From positions 206,866 through 270,865 of IMG/VR virus record IMGVR_UViG_3300034050_000451: a stretch of 64,000 bases of DNA, one strand, 5' to 3'. Each line of letters starts with the position of its first letter. Position 1 is the first letter of the stretch. The position numbers and the translations under genes are program-made. This document shows, piece after piece, positions 46,489 through 63,037 of this stretch. The notes below the pieces were generated by a model. It saw nothing but the letters and a program-made list of their open reading frames with translations, had not been told where the DNA came from and searched no databases.

Positions 46489-49005
46489 TTAAAATGCAAA
46501 AAACTTTTCTGCTGTTTTGGTTGAGGATAAAACCTCTCCCCAATTTAATGCTCCATAGAAATCTTCCAATTTCTTAAGGAGTTCCCTTTCAAAGATTTTA
46601 TCATAATCAATGTAGGTAGTTACTAAGTCCATAATTTCTTTTGGGTCACTATAACCATTTAATCCAACTGCATCTAATCCAAATGGGTTTTGTTTAAGAT
46701 ATACCCATTTAATTTTATCACCATCTTTTAATGGTGCAAATTGATTTTCTAAACCAAAATGAATTAATAGTTGATTATATGCAATAGATGCTTTAACGTG
46801 TGCTGGGCAACCTGATGGGAATTGAAACATTGCCGTTTGTTGTTTCTTCTTTGGCATGTACTTTGTTAAGTTTTTAACTGCTCCGGCTTTAGCAATCTTA
46901 ACAACATCCATATTAACCAATTCTTTTTTGAAATTATAAACTTTATCAGTTATTTGGGTTTCCGTATCACCTCTAAGAATTTCAATTAATATTTCTCCCA
47001 TAAACTTACGGAAAGCCGCTGGGTATGATGACCTAACCACATCTAATCCCTTTACATCCAATCTATCACAAGGTACACCATTATCGGAAATAATCCATTG
47101 TGCGTATCTCTTTTTAGCAATCCAAATACCAGCTTTTGATACGAATTCCTTTTTAATTTCAAATCTATGCTTATCAATGTTGAATACCCTTTTACCTAAG
47201 ATATCATAGAAGTCATTTAGGTAATTCTGCATCTCACCAGCTATATCATTTACATAACCAGCAATTACATCCTGCTCATCATTTTTCCAATTTGGAATTC
47301 GATGGTCTAAAAGAGGAACTGCGGAGAAAAATACCGAATCAGTATCAATATATATATTACTGTCAGCATCAGGAGTGCCAAGCTCCTTATTGTATTTGAT
47401 GTTAGCCATATCAGCTGTGCTTTTAATAACTGTCTGTCCCGTAGTGGTAACAGCGGTAGCATTATCAACATCATAGAACCTAAAGGCAGGAAGACCAAGC
47501 ACCCCATATAAAGAGTTAAGTAAAATTTTCTGAACCAGCTGGCGTTTTTTATAGAATGCGTACTTTTCTTTATCTCCCTCATCACCATATTTTTTTTCTA
47601 ATTTTCTAAATTCAACCCTTTGAGAGAACCATAAGTCCAATATATCAGGAATACAACCCGGTGTATCCGTTCTATACATAACACCATTTGATGCTACGGA
47701 ATATTTACTTTTCTCTAATAGAATTTTTAGATTTTCTTTTGTTATGTAATTATCACCAACTTTATACTCATTAACTTCACCTTTTAAGTATTTTTGTGCA
47801 TCCCAATCTTCCAACTTACCAACTTTGGTTTCTGGTGAGATATTGATACTCATAATGATTGATGGATATAGGGAAGTTAAATCCAAATCATAAATCCAAT
47901 CATATTTTCCAACAATAGGTGCTTTAACATATGCTCCAATGAATTTCTCTTCATTATTTTCCTTAAGAGCTTCCATTCTCTCTCTTCTATCAGCAGGTTT
48001 GTTAGGTGCTACAATGTTCTTTCTTTTAAGATAACATAATAATGCTCCTTCCAAATACTTTGATGAATATACGAAATCTTCATATGGAACGTGTCCTGCG
48101 TGGCAGATACCTCTAGCGGTATCTATGAATTGTAGTTTCTTATCAAAATCAACAACTAACTCAACATCGACTAAGTTATACTCAATAAACTTTTCAATAT
48201 CATCTCTGAATAAGATATCTAAGTTTCCTTCATATTCAATCTTACCCCTACCCAATTCTCTTTGAGCAATGGTATCTAATCTATATGAATCTAATTCTGA
48301 ATATGTGAAGTTTTTATAAAGTGAAAGGTAATCCAAATAAGATACACCTGCCATAAAATACCTTTTACGATATGGTGACCAAAAACACTGTCCAATTGGT
48401 GATAATCTATTTGCATGTCTTTCACCCAATAAACGTTTGATACGATTATATAACATTGGTGTATCGAAATAATCAATATTCCAACCAGTTACAATAGATG
48501 GATTTATATACTCATACAATTCCAAATATTTCATTAACATATCTTCTTCATGTGTAAACGGAATAACGATAGCTTTATCAGTTTTACGCTCTACCATTTG
48601 ACCTTTTTTATCCATTACTAATACCCAATATTGGTTAGTAGCAGAATCATGCAGTGCAATTGATGTTAATTCATTCTCTGCTTTTTCTGGGTCAGGTAAT
48701 CCACTCTCCATCTCACACTCAATATCATATGTAAGTGTAACGTGTCCTTCAGATGGAATATCCGAATTGGTGTACATATCTACTAAAACTCTCGTAGTTT
48801 CAGGTACATCTGATTCAAATAGTGTAGGGTCATCTCCTTTGAATTTATAAATCTTAGTCACCTTATCTCCATATAGAGTGGTGTACTCACCATTTACTGC
48901 TTTTTCATAAGCATATCGGGTATATGGAAAACTCCTATACCCTTGAGTATCATCCCACAAATGGACTAAGTTCTTTTCTCTTTGATAATATATGTTTGAA
49001 TACAA
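46489..49005 (-). CDS. Family B DNA polymerase (TTG start)
   Basis: DIE, GWN..FD exo motifs; DLTSLYPS, KILLNSLYG, YIDTDS, KKRY. Confidence 0.97.
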   Translation of the reverse strand: MYSNIYYQREKNLVHLWDDTQGYRSFPYTRYAYEKAVNGEYTTLYGDKVTKIYKFKGDDPTLFESDVPETTRVLVDMYTNSDIPSEGHVTLTYDIECEMESGLPDPEKAENELTSIALHDSATNQYWVLVMDKKGQMVERKTDKAIVIPFTHEEDMLMKYLELYEYINPSIVTGWNIDYFDTPMLYNRIKRLLGERHANRLSPIGQCFWSPYRKRYFMAGVSYLDYLSLYKNFTYSELDSYRLDTIAQRELGRGKIEYEGNLDILFRDDIEKFIEYNLVDVELVVDFDKKLQFIDTARGICHAGHVPYEDFVYSSKYLEGALLCYLKRKNIVAPNKPADRRERMEALKENNEEKFIGAYVKAPIVGKYDWIYDLDLTSLYPSIIMSINISPETKVGKLEDWDAQKYLKGEVNEYKVGDNYITKENLKILLEKSKYSVASNGVMYRTDTPGCIPDILDLWFSQRVEFRKLEKKYGDEGDKEKYAFYKKRQLVQKILLNSLYGVLGLPAFRFYDVDNATAVTTTGQTVIKSTADMANIKYNKELGTPDADSNIYIDTDSVFFSAVPLLDHRIPNWKNDEQDVIAGYVNDIAGEMQNYLNDFYDILGKRVFNIDKHRFEIKKEFVSKAGIWIAKKRYAQWIISDNGVPCDRLDVKGLDVVRSSYPAAFRKFMGEILIEILRGDTETQITDKVYNFKKELVNMDVVKIAKAGAVKNLTKYMPKKKQQTAMFQFPSGCPAHVKASIAYNQLLIHFGLENQFAPLKDGDKIKWVYLKQNPFGLDAVGLNGYSDPKEIMDLVTTYIDYDKIFERELLKKLEDFYGALNWGEVLSSTKTAEKFFAF

Positions 49006-49047
49006 ATTTCTTTTATTTAATTGTTCTACAAATATACGATAATTTTT

Positions 49048-50169
49048 TTACTTATCAAAAGTATTTCTCGCATTATTTACGAAGTTTTCTTCGATTTTCC
49101 AACTTTTAAGTTGAGATTCCCATAATAGTGATTGAGCAATGTGAGTTATATCAGGTCTTTCAATTTCACCATCTAATAATTTAACAACCATTTCTTTAAA
49201 TTCTTTTTTTCCATTGTAAAGAAGTGGGTATTCGTTACCAACCATTTCAGGGTAACAAAAATCATTAGGTAGTAAATAAGGTACACCTCTACTTAACCCA
49301 TCAGTTGCACTCATACTCCATGCTGAATAACCTTGAAACGTTCCTACACCAAAATGAGCTTCTGCTAATTGATTCATATAAACATTCCTATCAGCATGTC
49401 CAATATATTTGGTATATGGTTTATTCATATTGTTTAAGGAAGTCCAAACTTCAAAATCTTGTCTTTCTTTCCATAGGTTATCCATAGTTTCAAAAAACCA
49501 ATCTGAACCTGTATATACACCTTCTCTATGATTAAACACAATAGTTTTTGGTTTATATGTTTGAGTTGGTGTTGCTGAATCGCATCCTAAATACCAAGGT
49601 TGAATAATCTCTTCTAACTTATCAGTAATATGCGATTTAAATGTTTCTTTTGCTCTTTTAATAACCAAATCTTTAACCCATTGTGAGTTTACACCACAAA
49701 CCTTCATTTGTAACATGCCTTTCACATTTCTCCAAAATGAATTATCATCTCTAGCACCATTATCTTTAATTTCCCACCAATGACAATAACCAATAATAGG
49801 TTGTGTTTTATTGTAAATACGAGTAATTTTAAACTCATTAGTCCATTCAGGTAAATGTGACCAAATTAGATTAAATTCACCATTATATTTTTCAATAATT
49901 CGGTTGAAGAAATTATTGGGATAATCTACTCTCATTTTTGGTGGAAAACAATCCAATCCATCCATTTTAACCAACTTAACATTGGGATATTCAAATTGAT
50001 TGATTATACCAGGGTGGTTATTTAAATCTGGGTATGGGAGAATCCATTCCCATTCTTTTCCTATTTCGGTGTTGTCTAAAAATGACTTAAACACCAATAG
50101 GAACGAATCCCTATTGATGTCTTTTGCCATACCAAAATTTGTGTAATTAGGTATTACTAATACTCTCAT
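49048..50169 (-). CDS. GT-B glycosyltransferase adjacent to polymerase (candidate DNA glycosyltransferase)
   Basis: YCHWWE, FNHR, WSMSATDG...GVP, YPEMV. Confidence 0.65.
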   Translation of the reverse strand: MRVLVIPNYTNFGMAKDINRDSFLLVFKSFLDNTEIGKEWEWILPYPDLNNHPGIINQFEYPNVKLVKMDGLDCFPPKMRVDYPNNFFNRIIEKYNGEFNLIWSHLPEWTNEFKITRIYNKTQPIIGYCHWWEIKDNGARDDNSFWRNVKGMLQMKVCGVNSQWVKDLVIKRAKETFKSHITDKLEEIIQPWYLGCDSATPTQTYKPKTIVFNHREGVYTGSDWFFETMDNLWKERQDFEVWTSLNNMNKPYTKYIGHADRNVYMNQLAEAHFGVGTFQGYSAWSMSATDGLSRGVPYLLPNDFCYPEMVGNEYPLLYNGKKEFKEMVVKLLDGEIERPDITHIAQSLLWESQLKSWKIEENFVNNARNTFDK

Positions 50170-50174
50170 CCATT

Positions 50175-51698
50175 TTATTTTAAAATTGCTTTATTTGATT
50201 TTCTGATATTTGATGTTTTATTTCTGATTACTAAATTTTGTATAGTAGTTTCATTACCACTTGCTCTAGCATCAATATGGTCACCTTCCATAATTGAATT
50301 AGTACCCATTAGTTGCTCAAATGTGAACTCATTCCCATCAGCATCAATCCAATCATTTTGAATTGCTGCGTTTAATTTTTGTTTTTTAGTATAGTTTGTA
50401 GTATCAATTAAAGTAATAACACCACTAGCGAAAAGTTTATCATAACTTTTATAAAACTTTTCCATAATCATAGTAGAACGAATTTGTATATCATCCGTTT
50501 TCTTAGCTCCACATTTTCTTTTAAATGATTCGGCGTTTGTTGATTTCTTACCAGTAATAGGATGTACATAATCTTTTCCAGTTGCCGGGTCTATAAGGAA
50601 TTCATCTTCCTTTCTCAAAGTTGCTTCAGTTTTTGCAAACCAATCGATAAACTTTTTATAACTATTAATTTTTATCTCCTTATCTTTATTATTCATTGGG
50701 TGAGATGGAGTATTCAATACCGTCATTAATATAAATAAGTTATCTAAGAATGTTCTTTCAAATTTAACATCTCCGGCTGAATTTGCTAATTCTATCGATT
50801 TACTGATTAATGATTTAGTATCATTCATTCTCTTTTTACTATGTTTTGGTAATCCTTCAATTGAAGCCATAGTATCTAACATAGAATTCTTTGGCCAACT
50901 ATATATGTTACCCTCCAATACGTTGTAATAATATGCAAACCATTCAGCTATTATAAGTGCATCACCCTTTTTCAAAAGAGAGTAATCGCTTGATAGATTC
51001 TTTGTATTATTAAACATTGCTGTTAATAATGGGTTATTATTCATAAATGAATGTAGGAATCTATTGAATTGAGATGGTATGATAATTCTTCGTTCATTAT
51101 CATTCCAAGGTTCTCCGATATTGGTATAGATTGTAATATCAACCATATCCTGCAAAGTTGCTTTTTCAACTAATACAATTGTAATTGGTAAATCCAATAC
51201 TTGCTTTTGAGTAAGTTCCGGCATATCTTTGAAATATATACCTTTCATTTCAAATGGTATTGTATTACCATCTTTACTTTCGATTAAATCAATTACTGAT
51301 TCTGTAATTGTAAATTTGGAATTTAAATAGTCAGAATAACATTCCACTCTATGTTGACCATCTATATTTAGATAACGATATCCTAACTTTGTTAGGTTTT
51401 GTAAGTAATCAATTGTTTCTTTAACAGATTCATATCTGTCATCTCCTTCAGAATATTGAGATATCAATGATTCACAATAGTCTAAACATCCATCAATACT
51501 TACTAATACAATTGTGTAGATATTTGAGTGTCCAATTAAACACGCTTTCATATGTTTTGCTGATGTTGTATCCTCCCACTTATCAAGCAATCTTTGTAAT
51601 TGATGCTTATCCACATAAATATAAGGGGACATTTCTCTTAGTTTGTTTAGAGTTCCACCAGAAAGAACTTTTGCGCTAATTGATTTTTTAATAGCCAT
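50175..51698 (-). CDS. DUF262 (ParB-like) + C-terminal HNH protein, GmrSD/SspE-like architecture
   Basis: LQR...W, IDGQHR, TNIGEPW; EGDHI...G..T..NL...N..KS. Confidence 0.7.
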   Translation of the reverse strand: MAIKKSISAKVLSGGTLNKLREMSPYIYVDKHQLQRLLDKWEDTTSAKHMKACLIGHSNIYTIVLVSIDGCLDYCESLISQYSEGDDRYESVKETIDYLQNLTKLGYRYLNIDGQHRVECYSDYLNSKFTITESVIDLIESKDGNTIPFEMKGIYFKDMPELTQKQVLDLPITIVLVEKATLQDMVDITIYTNIGEPWNDNERRIIIPSQFNRFLHSFMNNNPLLTAMFNNTKNLSSDYSLLKKGDALIIAEWFAYYYNVLEGNIYSWPKNSMLDTMASIEGLPKHSKKRMNDTKSLISKSIELANSAGDVKFERTFLDNLFILMTVLNTPSHPMNNKDKEIKINSYKKFIDWFAKTEATLRKEDEFLIDPATGKDYVHPITGKKSTNAESFKRKCGAKKTDDIQIRSTMIMEKFYKSYDKLFASGVITLIDTTNYTKKQKLNAAIQNDWIDADGNEFTFEQLMGTNSIMEGDHIDARASGNETTIQNLVIRNKTSNIRKSNKAILK

Positions 51699-51716
51699 AA
51701 TAATTTAATTTTTTTT

Positions 51717-51788
51717 GGTATCGTTGTTGTGGTGATACCTTTACCACATTGTTTATTTTGAACTCATATAAGGGTGAGTTCTTACCCT
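51717..51788 (-). promoter_or_regulatory. Two tandem H-type RNA pseudoknots in the 5' UTR of the DUF262-HNH gene
   Basis: AGGGT-AA-GAACTC-ACCCT-TATAT-GAGTTC and TGTGGT-AAA-GGTATC-ACCACA-ACAAC-GATACC; all pairs Watson-Crick. Confidence 0.75.
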
Positions 51789-51800
51789 ATCTTTATAACA

Positions 51801-51832
51801 CTAAGATACGAATTATAATTCATATAGCAAAA
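51801..51832 (-). promoter_or_regulatory. Class I promoter driving the pseudoknot leader
   Basis: TTTG-N19-TATCTTAG. Confidence 0.6.
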
Positions 51833-51880
51833 TGTTTTTTAATTATTTTATAACTAATTGATTATCAATAAGTTAGTATT

Positions 51881-52684
51881 TTACCAAAAATTGATGTCAT
51901 TACTCTCTTCTGGTGCGTATGTAGTGTGATGTACTACTTCGGTATTATAATCGTTTAAATCCTTTGGATATGGCTGTATTGGATGTTTTAATCTACCCAT
52001 CAAGTCCTTTCTCTCCTTCTTATTTTGGGGTAATATTTGAATATACCTATGTTTTGGTGGTTCTTCTCTTCTCCAAAACTCCTTATATCCATCCTTTCCA
52101 ATTTCCTTTCTAAGATGCTCCAAATTACCACTTCCCCAGTTATTATAAACTGTCCTACTATGAATCCAATCGAATGGGTCATTAATTAATGAAATTCCCC
52201 AATTTGGCATCAATGCAATATCAGTATTTAATCCCTGATAAATCCAATTGGTAGCTTTGTATATCCCACCAACGTGTCCTTGTCCATTATTAGCGTATGA
52301 TAGTAATACTTTAATATTAGTATCATTTTCTCTAATCCATTGGAATGTTTTACCTAATGCACAACTTTCAATATTTGAACCATATCCATCATCAACATAC
52401 AAACGGGTAAGTTCTAAGATGTTATCTTTTGTTAACCCATCACATACCGATGTTGGTGCTTTGGCTCCAACAGGGAACCCATAAACTGCTACTCCAACTA
52501 ATTTGTTATCTGAAAACCCAACTGATGTTTCATCTTCTCTATAATAGATACCCAATGCGTATCTACATGCTGTCCAAGCATGAGTGTAGTGTTTTTTAAC
52601 AATCATATCTTTAGCGATAGATTTAGCAATAGGAGCTACACTTACTCTACTGGCATCAACATAATGTTTACCTTCTTCTTTCAT
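51881..52684 (-). CDS. Mom-like GNAT DNA-modification protein, copy 1
   Basis: HY, LVGVAVYG, LELTRL, IES, SYA...GHVGGIYKATNWIYQG, KHRY. Confidence 0.8.
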   Translation of the reverse strand: MKEEGKHYVDASRVSVAPIAKSIAKDMIVKKHYTHAWTACRYALGIYYREDETSVGFSDNKLVGVAVYGFPVGAKAPTSVCDGLTKDNILELTRLYVDDGYGSNIESCALGKTFQWIRENDTNIKVLLSYANNGQGHVGGIYKATNWIYQGLNTDIALMPNWGISLINDPFDWIHSRTVYNNWGSGNLEHLRKEIGKDGYKEFWRREEPPKHRYIQILPQNKKERKDLMGRLKHPIQPYPKDLNDYNTEVVHHTTYAPEESNDINFW

Positions 52685-52685
52685 T

Positions 52686-52838
52686 TTACTTTACCCACTC
52701 ATTAAATGCGTTTTCAAATGCGGTTACCTTATCCACTCCTTCAGATTGATATTGTTTTGCAGTTTCTATTACTTCAAAACGTAAACCAAATGCGGATGCC
52801 TCCATTAAGATTTCTTCAATTTGCTCCTCTGCTGTCAT
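52686..52838 (-). CDS. Small acidic protein (50 aa)
   Basis: Hand translation MTAEEQIEEILMEASAFGLRFEV...NEWVK. Confidence 0.55.
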   Translation of the reverse strand: MTAEEQIEEILMEASAFGLRFEVIETAKQYQSEGVDKVTAFENAFNEWVK

Positions 52839-52840
52839 AA

Positions 52841-53044
52841 CTAATTTAATTTGATTGTTGTATTAATATAATGCTCTCTTACTTTGTTTAACCACACCTT
52901 ATCTTTTGGGTGGTAATGACCTGAACGTAATGTGAAATCAACTAATTGTTGATGTGGATAATCTCCACCAATAGTCTTTATAAGTTTCAAAAGTTCCCTT
53001 AACTCATTTGTTAGTGGAAAAAACTTTATAGGTTTCCTAGCCAT
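52841..53044 (-). CDS. Small hypothetical protein
   Basis: ORF track; promoter at 53062. Confidence 0.55.
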   Translation of the reverse strand: MARKPIKFFPLTNELRELLKLIKTIGGDYPHQQLVDFTLRSGHYHPKDKVWLNKVREHYINTTIKLN

Positions 53045-53074
53045 ATATTTAATTTATAAAACAAATATACGAAA

Positions 53075-53842
53075 TTAATTTGATATTTCCAAATTAATCG
53101 GTTCCATTTTTGTAATTTGTTCTATAAATTCCTCATTTTCCTTTGGATATGGGAATAATGGGTGCTTTATGGTTTTCATAAGTTTCCTACGTTCGCCACC
53201 TTTTGAGAGAATATACACATATCTATGTTTTCTTGGGTTCTTTCGTATCCAAAACGTAGATGATGCTATCTTTTGGATTTCAGTTGGATTGTTAGTTCCA
53301 AATTTGACATAAGATGTTCGTTGGTGGTGCCAATCACCATCTTCTTCCCATCGAAAATCCCAACTATCGTTAAATCTTAGTTTGTTACCCTGATACAACC
53401 AATTTGTGGCTTGATATATAGTACCACAATGTCCTTCTTTCGGGTCTGAATATGATATTAGTGCTTTAATGTTTGGTACATTTTCTCTTAACCAATCAAA
53501 TGTTTGAGATAGGAACCAACTTTCAATATTAGAACCATAACCATCAAATACAAATAATCGAGTTAATTCTAATACCTCATCCCGTTCTAATAGGGGTGTA
53601 ATTGATTGCCCAGCACTTCTACCTATTGGGTCACCATAACAAGCAACTCCAATTAATTTATCTTCTACATTACTAAAGAATGTATGCTCTTCTACTTCAG
53701 AGGTAAATAAACCAATAGCATAGGATACTTTAGTCCACAAACCACTATAATGATTGTTTACTATAATATCCTTTGCTACCGATTTGGTTATTAATCTAAT
53801 TGATAGCTTTGAAGTATCGCAATATTGTTTGTTTTCTTTCAT
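53075..53842 (-). CDS. Mom-like GNAT DNA-modification protein, copy 2
   Basis: HYS, LIGVACYG, LELTRL, IES, SYSD..EGHCGTIYQATNWLYQG, KHRY. Confidence 0.8.
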   Translation of the reverse strand: MKENKQYCDTSKLSIRLITKSVAKDIIVNNHYSGLWTKVSYAIGLFTSEVEEHTFFSNVEDKLIGVACYGDPIGRSAGQSITPLLERDEVLELTRLFVFDGYGSNIESWFLSQTFDWLRENVPNIKALISYSDPKEGHCGTIYQATNWLYQGNKLRFNDSWDFRWEEDGDWHHQRTSYVKFGTNNPTEIQKIASSTFWIRKNPRKHRYVYILSKGGERRKLMKTIKHPLFPYPKENEEFIEQITKMEPINLEISN

Positions 53843-62886: not shown

Positions 62887-63005
62887 TGTTTTTTGTTTTA
62901 AAAGTTTATAATTAAGTTTTAATGGTTTTATTATGGTGTCTTTCCTACACCTTATATAAATATCAAAAAACCAAGTTTTAAGATGGTCTTATCCATTTAT
63001 TTATA

Positions 63006-63037
63006 CAAATATACGAATAAAATCTGATACTTCCAAA
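63006..63037 (-). promoter_or_regulatory. Class I promoter of SSB (a class II motif also lies at about 62955)
   Basis: TTTG-N20-TATATTTG; same motif at 16828, 17985, 25531, 42715, 46457, 49029, 53062, 59601, 63464. Confidence 0.7.

What the first reader, a model, noticed from the sequence alone, without database searches (positions are those of the whole stretch)
51717..51788. Tandem covarying H-type pseudoknots in the leader of a DUF262-HNH + glycosyltransferase unit
Seen: between the promoter (51801-51832) and the ATG at 51698 the minus-strand RNA reads AGGGU-AA-GAACUC-ACCCU-UAUAU-GAGUUC, an 11-nt A-rich spacer (AAAAUAAACAA), then UGUGGU-AAA-GGUAUC-ACCACA-ACAAC-GAUACC and an A/U tract to the start codon. 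Both units have the same topology: S1 5-6 bp, L1 2-3 A, S2 6 bp, L2 0 nt, L3 5 nt. Every pair is Watson-Crick and the sequences differ except for a core GGU-AA(A)-G...UC-ACC...GA, so the two copies covary. Established: compact H-type pseudoknots act as the T-even gene 32 translational operator, as preQ1-I/SAM-II riboswitch aptamers, and as tandem ToxI antitoxin repeats of type III TA systems. Inference: an undescribed structured-RNA module that either controls a potentially self-toxic nuclease (tandem operator/riboswitch) or is processed at the A-rich spacer into RNA antitoxin/decoy units.
Basis: partly seen in the sequence, partly recalled or inferred. Interest (0 to 1): 0.88.

Follow-up and report, generated by a model that had tools for sequence, protein, structure and literature searches.

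The report
Conserved tandem pseudoknots in phage leader
The 5' untranslated leader of a nuclease-plus-glycosyltransferase operon in an uncultured 270-kb lake phage folds into two small RNA pseudoknots that relatives keep through many compensatory mutations; the RNA element is real and absent from Rfam 15 and the papers searched, but its function (probably control of translation) is still only inferred.

Summary
On the minus strand, 51788-51760 and 51748-51717 are two all-Watson-Crick H-type pseudoknots between a promoter and the ATG at 51698.

- **Chance.** A tandem like this arose in 1 of 100 dinucleotide-shuffled genomes, and in 0 of 100 with comparable G+C.
- **Conservation.** 21 distinct versions sit upstream of homologous genes (51-94% protein identity) in lake and marine viral contigs. 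99.1% of stem cells pair, against 26-50% in slid controls. 11 of 22 pairs change on both sides, and all four helices covary. G.U pairs place the structure on the sense-strand RNA.
- **Specificity.** The element occurs once in the 270-kb genome and, in IMG/VR, only in front of this gene family. It has no Rfam match.
- **Position.** It starts about 8 nt after the predicted start of a Bacteroidota-type promoter. Its second knot always ends 16-20 nt before the AUG.

The function is not shown. I favour a protein-bound translational operator, as in T4 gene 32 (about 0.4). The rivals are a 5' stabiliser or ribosome standby platform, a tandem riboswitch and put-like antitermination. The antitoxin reading is disfavoured, because a 90%-identical homologue lacks the element, the two units are not identical repeats, and the protein is not ToxN-like.

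The parts
51801..51831 (-). Promoter of the Bacteroidota sigma-A type: -33 TTTG (51831-51828), 19-nt spacer, -7 box TATCTTAG (51808-51801). The predicted transcription start is about 51796.
   Evidence: About 35 sites on the minus strand of the genome share the full consensus, and a looser pattern finds 49 on both strands. The -7 box geometry (G at -5) is taken from PMC6847099. The start site is predicted, not measured.
51760..51788 (-). Pseudoknot unit 1. S1 pairs 51788-51784 with 51775-51771 (5 bp). L1 is AA. S2 pairs 51781-51776 with 51765-51760 (6 bp). L2 is 0 nt. L3 is TATAT.
   Evidence: Sequence. Covariation is seen in both helices across 20-21 leaders.
51749..51759 (-). A-rich single-stranded spacer (AAAAUAAACAA). 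It is 11-15 nt long in relatives.
   Evidence: Its sequence is not conserved beyond being A-rich.
51717..51748 (-). Pseudoknot unit 2. S1 pairs 51748-51743 with 51733-51728 (6 bp here, 5 bp in relatives). L1 is AAA. S2 pairs 51739-51734 with 51722-51717 (6 bp). L2 is 0 nt. L3 is ACAAC. This is the best-conserved module: GGU/ACC, UC/GA and the 3' AAC of L3 are invariant.
   Evidence: A pseudoknot with the same GGU/ACC core is also the AUG-proximal module in the variant type D leaders.
51696..51716 (-). Unstructured A/U-rich translation initiation region without a Shine-Dalgarno sequence (51716-51699), followed by the ATG (51698-51696).
   Evidence: The distance from the end of unit 2 to the AUG is 16-20 nt in all 21 elements.
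50175..51698 (-). Gene for the 507-aa DUF262 (ParB/GmrSD N-terminal-like, motif NIDGQHR) + C-terminal HNH protein.
   Evidence: The AF2 model (pLDDT 78.8) matches AFDB clusters named 'HNH Cas9-type domain-containing protein' (E 5.5e-16, TM 0.58) and DUF262/GmrSD N-terminal proteins. The Pfam HNH hit is only E 0.022. 46 homologues were found, all from metagenomes and none with an informative name.
49048..50169 (-). Gene for the 373-aa GT-B (GT4-like) glycosyltransferase. It starts 5 nt after the stop of the 507-aa gene and is in the same transcription unit.
   Evidence: The AF2 model (pLDDT 79.6) matches MshA (TM 0.71), BshA, PimB' and the phage HY126 glycosyltransferase. Atlas feature neighbours are GT4 families. 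The next gene, PolB, has its own promoter at about 49031-49058.

Best explanation
The element is a cis-acting structured RNA at the 5' end of the mRNA for the DUF262-HNH protein and the glycosyltransferase. It consists of two compact H-type pseudoknots (S1 5 bp, L1 1-4 nt, S2 6 bp, no L2, L3 5-6 nt). Each is about one coaxial helical turn. An A-rich linker separates them, and an unstructured A/U-rich, SD-less initiation region follows.

I propose that it is a translational operator. A protein, probably dimeric or cooperative, would recognise the invariant helical junction (GGU/ACC stacked on UC/GA, plus the AAC at the 3' end of L3) of the AUG-proximal knot. The upstream knot would be a second site. 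Bound 16-20 nt from the AUG, at the 5' edge of the 30S footprint, the protein would block, or spread along the A-rich RNA to block, ribosome loading on an mRNA that depends on an open leader. This would limit or time synthesis of a nuclease that is potentially dangerous to the phage's own DNA.

Shown: the structure, its conservation, its position and its gene specificity. Inferred: protein binding, the identity of the binder, and the direction of the effect (repression).
For: Structure:
- 99.1% of 440 stem cells pair, against 26-50% when the partners are slid.
- 11 of 22 pairs change on both sides.
- The covariation score is 0.401 against 0.131 in shuffles, reached by 0 of 500 shuffles.
- Each of the four helices has 2-3 covarying pairs.
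- In a structure-based parse, 460 of 462 cells pair in 21 distinct elements.
- G.U cells occur only as read on the gene's sense strand.

Gene specificity:
- Only one locus in the 270-kb genome carries the element.
- 17 of 19 IMG/VR hits to the unit 2 pattern are leaders of this gene family. The other two are chance hits in coding DNA.
- There is no true instance in 185,579 species genomes.

Position:
- The predicted transcription start lies 5-11 nt before unit 1.
- Unit 2 ends 16-20 nt before the AUG in every case.
- The spacer is 11-15 nt.
- The leader is about 98 nt, whereas most leaders in this genome are about 20-30 nt and the mean in F. johnsoniae is 33 nt (PMC6847099).

Recognition features:
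- Junction pairs and the AAC of L3 are invariant, while L1 varies in length and sequence.
- The number of modules varies. Type D leaders have three hairpins plus one pseudoknot. That suits repeated protein sites better than a ligand pocket.

Precedent: the T4/T2/RB69 gene 32 operator is a 5' H-type pseudoknot followed by an unstructured A+U-rich tract reaching the ribosome binding site (PMC3014915).

Transcription: metatranscriptome contigs of close relatives cover the gene and the leader up to the inter-unit spacer. X15 and X16 show no depth at 51814-51947; X17 shows a little (2.25).
Against: - No binding protein is identified, and nothing shows that any protein binds.
- The downstream protein is not a known RNA binder.
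- p507 variants of 52% and 92% identity sit behind nearly the same leader, so the leader does not co-evolve with that protein.
- The conserved junction and the AAC of L3 could reflect only a minor-groove triplex that stabilises the fold, with no partner.
- The transcription start is predicted, not measured.
- The RNA-seq evidence comes from assembled contigs of relatives at low depth and cannot exclude contaminating DNA.
- A 90%-identical homologue does without the element when it directly follows another gene. The control is therefore dispensable in another context.
Confidence: 0.4

Rival explanations
1. A factor-independent 5' module. The compact, very stable knots at the extreme 5' end would protect the mRNA from 5'-end-dependent decay. 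Alternatively, with the A-rich linker, they would form a landing or standby platform for ribosomal protein S1 and the 30S subunit, raising translation of an SD-less mRNA.
For: - Unit 1 starts only 5-11 nt from the predicted 5' end.
- Each knot is followed by A-rich single-stranded tracts.
- A 5' pseudoknot plus a single-stranded region is the S1/30S standby site of the tisB toxin mRNA, and many pseudoknots bind S1 (PMC7708055).
- The T4 gene 32 leader is also linked to unusual mRNA stability (PMC3014915).
- The element is absent exactly where the gene has no promoter of its own (L037 and the distant homologues).
Against: - A plain hairpin would be enough to stabilise an mRNA.
- Only one of about 35-49 promoter-driven units in the genome carries the element.
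- Invariant junction nucleotides and the fixed 16-20 nt distance to the AUG are not needed for protection.
- The initiation region is already unstructured, so there is no obvious need for standby.
Confidence: 0.25
2. A tandem riboswitch. Each about 30-nt knot would be a minimal aptamer, of the size of preQ1-I, SAM-II or guanidine-III, for a small molecule linked to DNA modification (a nucleotide, nucleotide sugar or modified-base precursor). Ligand-dependent folding would change access to the initiation region.
For: - H-type pseudoknots of this size are known aptamers, and tandem aptamers exist (own knowledge).
- The neighbouring genes are two Mom-like DNA modification enzymes, a glycosyltransferase, ribonucleotide reductase and thioredoxin.
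- The element is strictly gene-specific.
Against: - No Rfam riboswitch model matches, even at E up to 10.
- There is no L2, so S1 and S2 stack directly and no junction pocket remains.
- L1 varies from 1 to 4 nt with no conserved base.
- Almost all invariant positions are base-paired.
- No alternative helix that would serve as an expression platform is conserved. The only candidate, S2b of unit 1 with S2a of unit 2, fails in types A and B.
- In type D leaders, plain hairpins replace three modules.
Confidence: 0.12
3. A processed, trans-acting RNA partner of the nuclease. This could be a type III antitoxin-like inhibitor or decoy cut out at the A-rich spacer, or a structural RNA cofactor encoded in the 5' UTR, as the omega RNA is for IscB.
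For: - The tandem modules have a 41-44 nt period and A-rich linkers, close to ToxI/CptI repeat sizes (own knowledge).
- The HNH domain is Cas9/IscB-like by fold.
- Two metatranscriptome contigs end in or next to the spacer, and one of them runs straight into an Illumina adapter at about 51763.
Against: - The units share only about half their bases and are not repeats.
- There is no terminator between the units and the gene.
- The protein is not of the ToxN/CptN/TenpN type.
- L037 (90% identity) and 11 loci of homologues at 43% identity or less have no such unit anywhere in the DNA held.
- The leader type follows the genomic background, not the protein variant.
- The contig ends are single, low-depth observations from relatives.
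Confidence: 0.05
4. A put-like processive antiterminator. The nascent knots would bind the transcribing RNA polymerase just after initiation and carry it through a downstream pause or termination signal.
For: - The element lies directly after the promoter.
- A conserved 15-bp hairpin followed by a partly U-rich tail lies 47-80 nt into the glycosyltransferase gene (50122-50089). It is kept by compensatory synonymous changes.
Against: - The hairpin is A/U- and G.U-rich and is not a canonical intrinsic terminator.
- HK022 put RNAs are stem-loops, not pseudoknots (own knowledge).
- The constant distance to the AUG has no role in this model.
Confidence: 0.05
5. The complementarity acts at the DNA level, or on the other strand, and no RNA pseudoknot is involved. 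It could be interleaved palindromic operator sites for a DNA-binding protein such as a DndB-like DGQHR protein, or plus-strand hairpins that terminate antisense transcription. It could also be chance.
For: - The terminator scan flags both S1 hairpins on the plus strand, each followed by a T-rich run.
- DndB-family DGQHR proteins are reported to bind repeats in their own promoter region (own knowledge).
Against: - Half-sites change sequence while staying complementary in four separate helices, and these changes do not track the p507 variant.
- The S2 covariation is not explained by plus-strand terminators.
- G.U pairs on the sense strand would be A.C mismatches on the plus strand.
- All genes nearby are on the minus strand.
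- Chance is excluded by the shuffles and the covariation.
Confidence: 0.03

Closest known systems
Translational operator of gene 32 (ssDNA-binding protein) of phages T4, T2 and RB69
   Same: - A phage mRNA leader with a 5' classical H-type pseudoknot of two coaxially stacked stems (5-7 bp each, a very short L1 and no inter-stem nucleotides).
- An unstructured A+U-rich tract follows and runs to the initiation codon (PMC3014915).
- The element is specific to one gene.
   Different: - Here there are two knots in tandem (or three hairpins plus one knot), not one.
- The last knot ends 16-20 nt from the AUG, not about 40 nt.
- The regulated gene encodes a DUF262-HNH protein, not an ssDNA-binding protein.
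- The promoter type points to a Bacteroidota host with SD-less initiation.
- There is no sequence similarity, and autoregulation is untested.
5' pseudoknot of the ribosome standby site of the tisB toxin mRNA (E. coli type I toxin-antitoxin system)
   Same: A pseudoknot close to the 5' end of an mRNA for a potentially harmful protein, next to single-stranded RNA. There it is needed for S1 and 30S binding (PMC7708055).
   Different: - In tisB the ribosome binding site is sequestered 100 nt away and the knot enables translation.
- Here the initiation region is open and lies directly 3' of the second knot.
- There is no antisense RNA partner and no homology.
Small H-type pseudoknot riboswitch aptamers (preQ1-I, SAM-II/SAM-V, guanidine-III)
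   Same: Size (29-32 nt per unit), H-type topology, an A-rich L3 able to lie in the minor groove of S1, a location in a 5' leader, and known tandem arrangements (own knowledge).
   Different: - No Rfam model matches.
- There is no L2 and no conserved unpaired pocket nucleotides.
- L1 is variable.
- S2 is a full 6 bp and does not include the ribosome binding site.
Type III toxin-antitoxin RNA antitoxins (ToxI, CptI, TenpI)
   Same: Tandem short pseudoknot-forming modules with A-rich junctions, placed directly upstream of a nuclease gene. Some occur in phages (own knowledge).
   Different: - The modules are not identical repeats.
- There is no terminator before the gene.
- The protein is a 507-aa DUF262-HNH protein, not a roughly 170-aa ToxN-fold RNase.
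- The element is dispensable in close homologues.

Membership tests
T4-type gene 32 translational operator | An H-type pseudoknot in the 5' leader, followed by an unstructured A+U-rich tract that reaches the start codon | tested here: met
   Both knots covary. The A/U tract at 51716-51699 and the A-rich spacer have no conserved pairing.
T4-type gene 32 translational operator | The regulated gene encodes the single-stranded-DNA-binding protein that binds the operator (autogenous control) | tested here: not met
   The gene encodes a DUF262 + HNH protein. Binding by any protein cannot be tested here.
Type III toxin-antitoxin (ToxIN/CptIN/TenpIN) | The antitoxin is an array of near-identical direct repeats | tested here: not met
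   The two units share only the core GGT..TC-ACC..GA and differ in every genome.
Type III toxin-antitoxin (ToxIN/CptIN/TenpIN) | A rho-independent terminator between the repeats and the toxin gene | tested here: not met
   No hairpin plus U-run lies on the sense strand between 51717 and 51698. The tract there is A-rich.
Type III toxin-antitoxin (ToxIN/CptIN/TenpIN) | The toxin is a ToxN/AbiQ-fold endoribonuclease that processes the repeats | tested here: not met
   The fold search gives DUF262/GmrSD N-terminal and HNH domains. PADLOC gives no hit. Processing cannot be tested, and the contig ends are only anecdotal.
preQ1-I riboswitch (RF00522) and other pseudoknot riboswitches in Rfam | A match to the family covariance model | tested here: not met
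   There is no hit at the gathering score in the window. No riboswitch family appears even at E up to 10 in three leader types.
preQ1-I riboswitch (RF00522) and other pseudoknot riboswitches in Rfam | Conserved unpaired nucleotides forming a ligand pocket at the helical junction (for example the L2 cytosine of preQ1-I) | tested here: not met
   L2 is 0 nt in all 42 units. L1 is variable. The invariant positions are paired, or are the AAC of L3.
Classical H-type RNA pseudoknot (structural class) | Two interleaved helices, both supported by covariation, with loop lengths that can span the grooves | tested here: met
   All four helices covary. L1 of 1-4 nt crosses a 6-bp S2, and L3 of 5-6 nt crosses a 5-bp S1. 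These lengths are sterically feasible by established pseudoknot geometry (own knowledge). No 3D model or probing was done.
GmrSD-like DUF262 + HNH nuclease (identity of the downstream protein) | An N-terminal DUF262/ParB-like domain with a DGQQR-type motif, and a C-terminal HNH motif | tested here: met
   NIDGQHR at residues 111-117 is invariant in 20 homologues. The C terminus carries GDHIDA...N...N. AFDB matches are listed. Pfam is sub-threshold (HNH E 0.022), and nuclease activity is untested.
HK022 put-type antiterminator RNA | Acts on RNA polymerase to suppress downstream terminators | not testable with these tools
   Only circumstantial: the element is promoter-proximal and a conserved hairpin lies at 50122-50089.

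The most novel reading that the evidence does not exclude
The two knots are not just a leader. They would be cut out at the A-rich linker and act in trans as an RNA partner of the DUF262-HNH nuclease. That partner could be an inhibitor that keeps the nuclease silent until the phage DNA is modified (an RNA antitoxin for a DNase, a class not described). It could instead be a small omega-RNA-like cofactor encoded in the 5' UTR of an HNH nuclease gene.
Probability: 0.05. Interest if true: 0.9.

Novelty: new variant of a known kind. Interest (0 to 1): 0.62.

Why it matters
Pseudoknotted leaders that control phage genes are very rare. [quoted passage not shown]

This report documents a second, unrelated leader family:
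- It has tandem H-type knots and clean covariation in every helix.
- It has a sharply defined position.
- It is associated exclusively with one gene pair, a GmrSD-like DUF262-HNH protein and a glycosyltransferase, inside a DNA-hypermodification module with two Mom-like genes.
- It occurs in uncultured, widespread lake and marine phages whose promoters point to Bacteroidota hosts.

Bacteroidota initiate translation without Shine-Dalgarno pairing, and little is known about RNA-based control in them or in their phages. The element is about 75 nt, small enough for direct biochemical and structural work. It offers a handle on how a phage times a nuclease relative to modification of its own DNA. It could also be added to Rfam.

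Tried and rejected
- **Rfam.** The whole window was scanned at gathering score and three leader types at E up to 10. Only noise came back: snoRNA, miRNA and sRNA models far below threshold.
- **Sequence annotation of the two proteins.** Pfam, PHROGs, NCBIfam, PADLOC and PDB sequence profiles gave nothing significant. Foldseek against the PDB found only weak HNH-domain hits for p507. AlphaFold DB clusters were needed.
- **GenBank phages.** There was no DNA or protein match for the region or for p507. The tool may hide the window's own record.
- **A loose pseudoknot descriptor** returned hundreds of meaningless hits and was replaced by a core-constrained one.
- **More instances elsewhere.** Three motif patterns were run against IMG/VR and one against 185,579 species genomes. 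Only leaders of the same gene family were real. Hits in L077, L083 and L085-L096 lie in unrelated, mostly G+C-richer sequence, inside a coding region where checked (L083), and lack S1. One perfect single unit in L207 is about what chance predicts.
- **A conserved alternative helix** between S2b of unit 1 and S2a of unit 2 is possible only in type C leaders. Types A and B leave 7-8 of 20 rows unpaired at three positions.
- **uORFs.** AUG-NGG-UAA overlaps the start of unit 2 in the window and many type C leaders, but is absent from type B (reading). Rejected as a conserved feature.
- **Plus-strand terminators** were rejected (see the rival explanations).
- **Nested MFE folding** is uninformative, with z = -1.56, because the algorithm cannot form pseudoknots.
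- **Metatranscriptomes** gave only low-depth contigs of relatives. No start site could be read.
- **Literature searches** for tandem pseudoknots in phage, DUF262 with pseudoknot, and Mom with DUF262 and glycosyltransferase found nothing.
- **No covariance model was built.** Pseudoknots cannot be modelled that way, and the descriptor scans had already answered the question.
Full report
**Where the window lies.** The window is the last 64 kb of a single 270,865-bp contig with 32.8% G+C. DNA runs from lake water hold it completely. This points to an uncultured jumbo phage of fresh water. All genes around the finding are on the minus strand. In order they are:
- ribonucleotide reductase large subunit and thioredoxin;
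- a Mom-like gene (53842-53075), two small ORFs, and a second Mom-like gene (52684-51881);
- a 182-nt intergenic region;
- a 507-aa ORF (51698-50175) and a 373-aa ORF (50169-49048);
- a family B DNA polymerase.

**The observation.**
- Unit 1 (51788-51760): AGGGU-AA-GAACUC-ACCCU-UAUAU-GAGUUC.
- Spacer (51759-51749): AAAAUAAACAA.
- Unit 2 (51748-51717): UGUGGU-AAA-GGUAUC-ACCACA-ACAAC-GAUACC.
- Then 18 A/U residues and the AUG at 51698.

Both units have the order S1a-L1-S2a-S1b-L3-S2b with no nucleotide between S2a and S1b, and every pair is Watson-Crick.

Single interleaved patterns of this size are not rare in such an A+T-rich genome. There are 22 loci on the two strands, against a mean of 9.55 in shuffled genomes, and most are low-complexity. 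A same-strand tandem appeared in only 1 of 100 dinucleotide-preserving shuffles of the whole genome. It appeared in none when each unit needed at least four G-C pairs. With the shared core as a descriptor (GGT, then N4TC directly followed by ACC, then GA), these are the only two perfect units in 270 kb.

**Conservation and covariation.** The 507-aa protein has 46 homologues of 91-42% identity. All come from metagenomes and none has an informative name. None is in the GenBank phage collection. I fetched 56 loci around homologues from IMG/VR and JGI/ENA metagenomes, and five more by exact protein look-up. The 130 nt upstream of each start codon fall into clear classes.
- **Type A** is the window. 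Six loci (L001-L003, L007-L009) have the same leader.
- **Type B** (for example L004, L036, L051, L052, L235) reads AAGGU-C/A-GYAUUC-ACCUU-AAUCC-GAAURY, then a spacer, then NCGGU-AAA-RGUAUC-ACCGN-AUYAAC-GAURCY.
- **Type C** (for example L018, L019, L034, L045) reads AGAGU-U-GAURUC-ACUCU-AUAAC-GAYAUC, then a spacer, then GNGGU-AA(A)-GRURUC-ACCYC-ANNAAC-GAYAYC.

In every case both helices of both units are retained although their sequences differ. On the MAFFT alignment of 20 distinct leaders (A3) with the pseudoknot written in two bracket types, one search gives:
- 99.1% of 440 cells are standard pairs. When the 3' partners are slid by 1-3 columns, 26-50% are.
- 11 of 22 pairs change on both sides.
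- The covariation score is 0.401 against 0.131 +/- 0.015 in column shuffles, reached by 0 of 500 shuffles.
- The four helices have 3, 3, 2 and 3 covarying pairs.

Three of the four unpaired cells are an alignment artefact: the window's S1a is shifted by one column because its L1 is longer. A structure-based parse removes this. It gives 21 distinct tandem elements with 460 of 462 cells paired, and the two mismatches are terminal pairs in L044. Several cells are G.U or U.G as read on the gene's strand. On the other strand they would be A.C mismatches. The structure therefore belongs to the sense transcript, not to duplex DNA or to a plus-strand RNA. I consider the existence of two H-type pseudoknots in this RNA to be as well supported as comparative analysis alone can make it.

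**Anatomy shared by all versions.**
- S1 is 5 bp, with its three junction-proximal pairs G-C, G-C and U-A invariant in unit 2.
- L1 is 1-4 nt and has no conserved base.
- S2 is 6 bp, with the two junction-proximal pairs U-A and C-G invariant in both units.
- L2 is always absent.
- L3 is 5-6 nt. It ends in AAC in 21 of 21 copies of unit 2 and 16 of 21 copies of unit 1.
- The inter-unit spacer is 11-15 nt and A-rich.
- Unit 2 ends 16-20 nt before the AUG.

S1 plus S2 make 11 stacked pairs, about one helical turn. The loop lengths fit the classical geometry, with a short L1 across the deep groove of a 6-bp S2 and a 5-6 nt A-rich L3 along the shallow groove of a 5-bp S1 (established pseudoknot stereochemistry; own knowledge). 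The invariant GGU/ACC together with the AAC of L3 may be a minor-groove triplex. That is inference.

**A fourth class.** Type D has six sequences whose proteins are 57-60% identical to the window's. It has four modules. Three are hairpins with AGAnnn hexaloops, each followed by (U)UAAAUC. The fourth, next to the AUG, is a pseudoknot with the same GGU/ACC core (AAGGU-AAC-NRUGAC-ACCUU-RA-GUCAY). Covarying pairs are seen in hairpins 1 and 3 and in S2 of that knot. The AUG-proximal pseudoknot is thus the constant feature, and the upstream modules vary in number and kind.

**Promoter and transcript.** Upstream of unit 1 nearly all leaders share TTCGTATATTTG. About 35 sites on the minus strand of the genome follow the full consensus TTTGG-N(about 17)-TCGTATATTTGTA. 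A looser pattern matches 49 sites on both strands, 38 of them followed by an ORF of at least 40 codons. This is the -33 TTTG / -7 TAnnTTTG promoter of the Bacteroidota primary sigma factor. Its -7 box has G at -5 (PMC6847099). The host is therefore probably a member of the Bacteroidota, which lack Shine-Dalgarno-led initiation and depend on open, A-rich leaders (same paper). This is an inference from promoter type.

In the window the boxes are TTTG at 51831-51828 and TATCTTAG at 51808-51801. Unit 1 would then begin 8 nt from the 5' end (5-11 nt in relatives), and the leader would be 98 nt. Most promoter-proximal genes of this phage have leaders of about 20-30 nt, and the mean in F. johnsoniae is 33 nt. 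The 16-20 nt after unit 2 thus look like a complete ordinary leader, with the two knots added in front of it. The polymerase gene has its own promoter at about 49031-49058. The knot-led transcription unit is therefore the 507-aa gene plus the 373-aa gene.

Metatranscriptome contigs of 90-97%-identical relatives cover the gene and the leader as far as the spacer (ends at 51753 and 51754). One contig continues 9 nt further and then runs into an Illumina adapter, a fragment end at about 51763 inside S2b of unit 1. Another reaches S1b of unit 2. Two of the three informative runs show no depth at 51814-51947, and X17 shows a little (2.25). This agrees with a start between the promoter and unit 2 and possibly with reverse-transcriptase stops at the knots. 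It is low-depth contig evidence and proves nothing.

**The genes.** Sequence libraries do not name either protein.
- **The 507-aa protein.** It carries an invariant NIDGQHR motif and a C-terminal GDH...N...N motif. Its AlphaFold model (pLDDT 78.8) matches AlphaFold DB clusters named 'HNH Cas9-type domain-containing protein' (E 5.5e-16, TM 0.58 over the full length). It also matches many DUF262/GmrSD N-terminal domain proteins (E 1e-10 to 1e-5).
- **The 373-aa protein.** Its model (pLDDT 79.6) has a GT-B fold closest to the GT4 retaining enzymes MshA (TM 0.71), BshA and PimB', and to a phage glycosyltransferase. Atlas neighbours agree.

**Synteny.** The order Mom-like gene, leader, DUF262-HNH, glycosyltransferase, PolB is conserved in the whole clade, but identities are mosaic. 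L004 is 92% identical in the DUF262-HNH protein but 56% in PolB. L018 is 63% and 88% respectively. Leader type follows the genomic background rather than the protein variant: type B leaders precede proteins of both 92% and 52% identity. Distant homologues (43% identity or less) keep the glycosyltransferase, and sometimes a Mom-like gene, next to them, but directly follow another ORF and have no knots. The same is true of L037, whose protein is 90% identical.

**Specificity.**
- The unit 2 pattern GGTATCACC-N5-AACGATACC has 19 hits in IMG/VR. Seventeen are these leaders. The other two lie in unrelated G+C-rich sequence (inside an ORF in L083) and lack S1.
- The twelve hits in 185,579 species genomes all lack S1 and lie in unrelated sequence.
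- More general patterns that leave S2 free gave 136 matches. Only the known leaders had both stems, plus one perfect single unit in a G+C-rich phage contig (L207:1783-1812, minus strand, 10 nt before an SD and an ORF). About 0.4 such hits are expected by chance.

The element is confined to this gene family in this phage clade.

**What it does.** Nothing here measures function, so the following is inference from anatomy. Five facts constrain it:
- the element is gene-specific;
- the last knot keeps a fixed, short distance to the AUG;
- junction nucleotides are invariant while L1 is free;
- the number of modules varies;
- the element is present only when the gene has its own promoter.

I favour a protein-recognised translational operator (0.4). 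The best precedent is the gene 32 operator of T4, T2 and RB69. It is a 5' H-type pseudoknot that nucleates cooperative protein binding along an unstructured A+U-rich tract covering the ribosome binding site (PMC3014915). A protein held 16-20 nt from the AUG would sit at the 5' edge of the 30S footprint of an mRNA that has no SD to help it. A GmrSD-like nuclease in a DNA-hypermodification module is a gene one would expect to be limited or delayed. Mu's mom, a relative of the upstream genes, is itself under translational control by an RNA-binding protein (own knowledge).

Against this, no binder is known and the leader does not co-evolve with the downstream protein.

The rival readings, ranked:
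- **Factor-independent role, 0.25.** A 5' stabiliser or an S1/30S standby platform, as shown for the tisB 5' pseudoknot (PMC7708055). It explains the 5'-terminal position and the A-rich linkers. It does not explain the specificity or the invariant junction.
- **Tandem riboswitch, 0.12.** It fits the size class and the metabolic neighbourhood. It is weakened by the lack of L2, by variable L1, by the absence of any conserved alternative helix, and by hairpins replacing knots in type D.
- **Processed RNA partner or antitoxin, 0.05.** Disfavoured for the reasons given in the membership table.
- **put-like antiterminator, 0.05.** Its only support is promoter proximity and the conserved hairpin inside the glycosyltransferase gene.
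- **DNA-level or plus-strand explanations, and chance, 0.03 together.** Effectively excluded by the covariation and the G.U pairs.

**Novelty and score.** No Rfam 15 family matches, and three literature searches found nothing comparable. Structured, pseudoknotted leaders are a known kind of regulator. This one is a new family with an unusual tandem architecture, in phages and hosts where RNA-based control is hardly explored. I therefore rate it a new variant of a known kind, with interest 0.62. The structure is solid and experimentally tractable, but the mechanism is open.

Noticed in passing
Genome-wide. In the window, for example at 53072, 46467, 42725, 17995 and 63474 (minus strand; position of the T of TCGTAT): About 35 sites on the minus strand share the promoter consensus TTTGG-N(about 17)-TCGTATATTTGTA, and a looser pattern finds 49 on both strands. 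This is the Bacteroidota -33 TTTG / -7 TAnnTTTG type. It implies that this jumbo phage uses the host's primary sigma factor for many genes and that the host is probably a member of the Bacteroidota.
   Followed up: partly
Window about 11057, 10834 and 8270 (minus strand), and genome positions 192746, 168301, 153914 and 148516 outside the window: A second recurrent leader motif follows the promoter of at least seven other genes...aGATTGAGAGAgtaATTAAt(c)AAACCCCTAAAA...ATG. It may be related to the GAGAGAUAACUC hairpins of the type D leaders. Its function is unknown.
   Followed up: no
Window 50089-50122 (minus strand), 47-80 nt into the glycosyltransferase gene: A 15-bp hairpin (three G.U pairs, 4-nt loop) followed by AAGUCAUUUU. 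It is kept in 10 of 14 relatives, with compensatory synonymous changes in four of them (GAC/GUG to GAU/GUA in L019 and L049; GGG/UCC to GAG/UUC in L023; a shift of G.U and G-C pairs in L034). A shorter hairpin sits at the same place in the 56%-identity group. It could be a processing, pausing or attenuation site.
   Followed up: partly
L024, L025, L046 and L047 at 2368-2500; L233 and L234 at 271-403: The variant (type D) leader of the same gene family has three hairpins with AGAnnn hexaloops, each followed by (U)UAAAUC, and then one pseudoknot next to the AUG. A 2-3 bp loop-tail pairing GA(U)/(A)UC is possible but cannot be tested.
   Followed up: partly
L045:1-97: In this leader both units have the same changed S2 (GAUGUC/GACAUC). 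That is four coordinated substitutions relative to other type C leaders. It suggests gene conversion between the two units, or selection for interchangeable S2 arms.
   Followed up: no
Loci L004-L054 compared with window 46489-53842: The region is strongly mosaic. Identity of the DUF262-HNH protein (51-94%) is uncoupled from that of the flanking Mom-like, glycosyltransferase and PolB genes (for example 92/70/56/56% in L004 against 63/88/84/88% in L018). This indicates frequent recombination within the DNA-modification module.
   Followed up: partly
L207:1783-1812 (minus strand): A perfect single unit with the same core (AGGGU-AA-GCGGUC-ACCCU-UUCAAC-GACCGC) in a 54% G+C viral contig. It follows a run of GGCATGGCA-like repeats and sits 10 nt before GAGGAG and an ORF unrelated to DUF262. 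About 0.4 such hits were expected by chance.
   Followed up: partly
Window about 51763 and 51753-51754: Metatranscriptome contigs of close relatives end in the inter-unit spacer. One runs into an Illumina adapter inside S2b of unit 1, so several reads share that fragment end. This could be a reverse-transcriptase stop at the knot, a processing site or chance.
   Followed up: no
Unit 2 L3 in relatives, for example L019 and L034 (AAUAAC): L3 of unit 2 in many leaders reads AAUAAC. A family B polymerase gene lies two genes downstream. This is probably a coincidence of A-rich sequence, and I mention it only as a candidate binder to test.
   Followed up: no
Window about 62890-63016 (minus strand): Another unusually long leader (about 120 nt) lies after a consensus promoter, before a 277-aa ORF. 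It contains hairpins such as UGGAUAAGACCA and GGUGUAGGAAAGACACC. It is not a pseudoknot by my descriptor.
   Followed up: no
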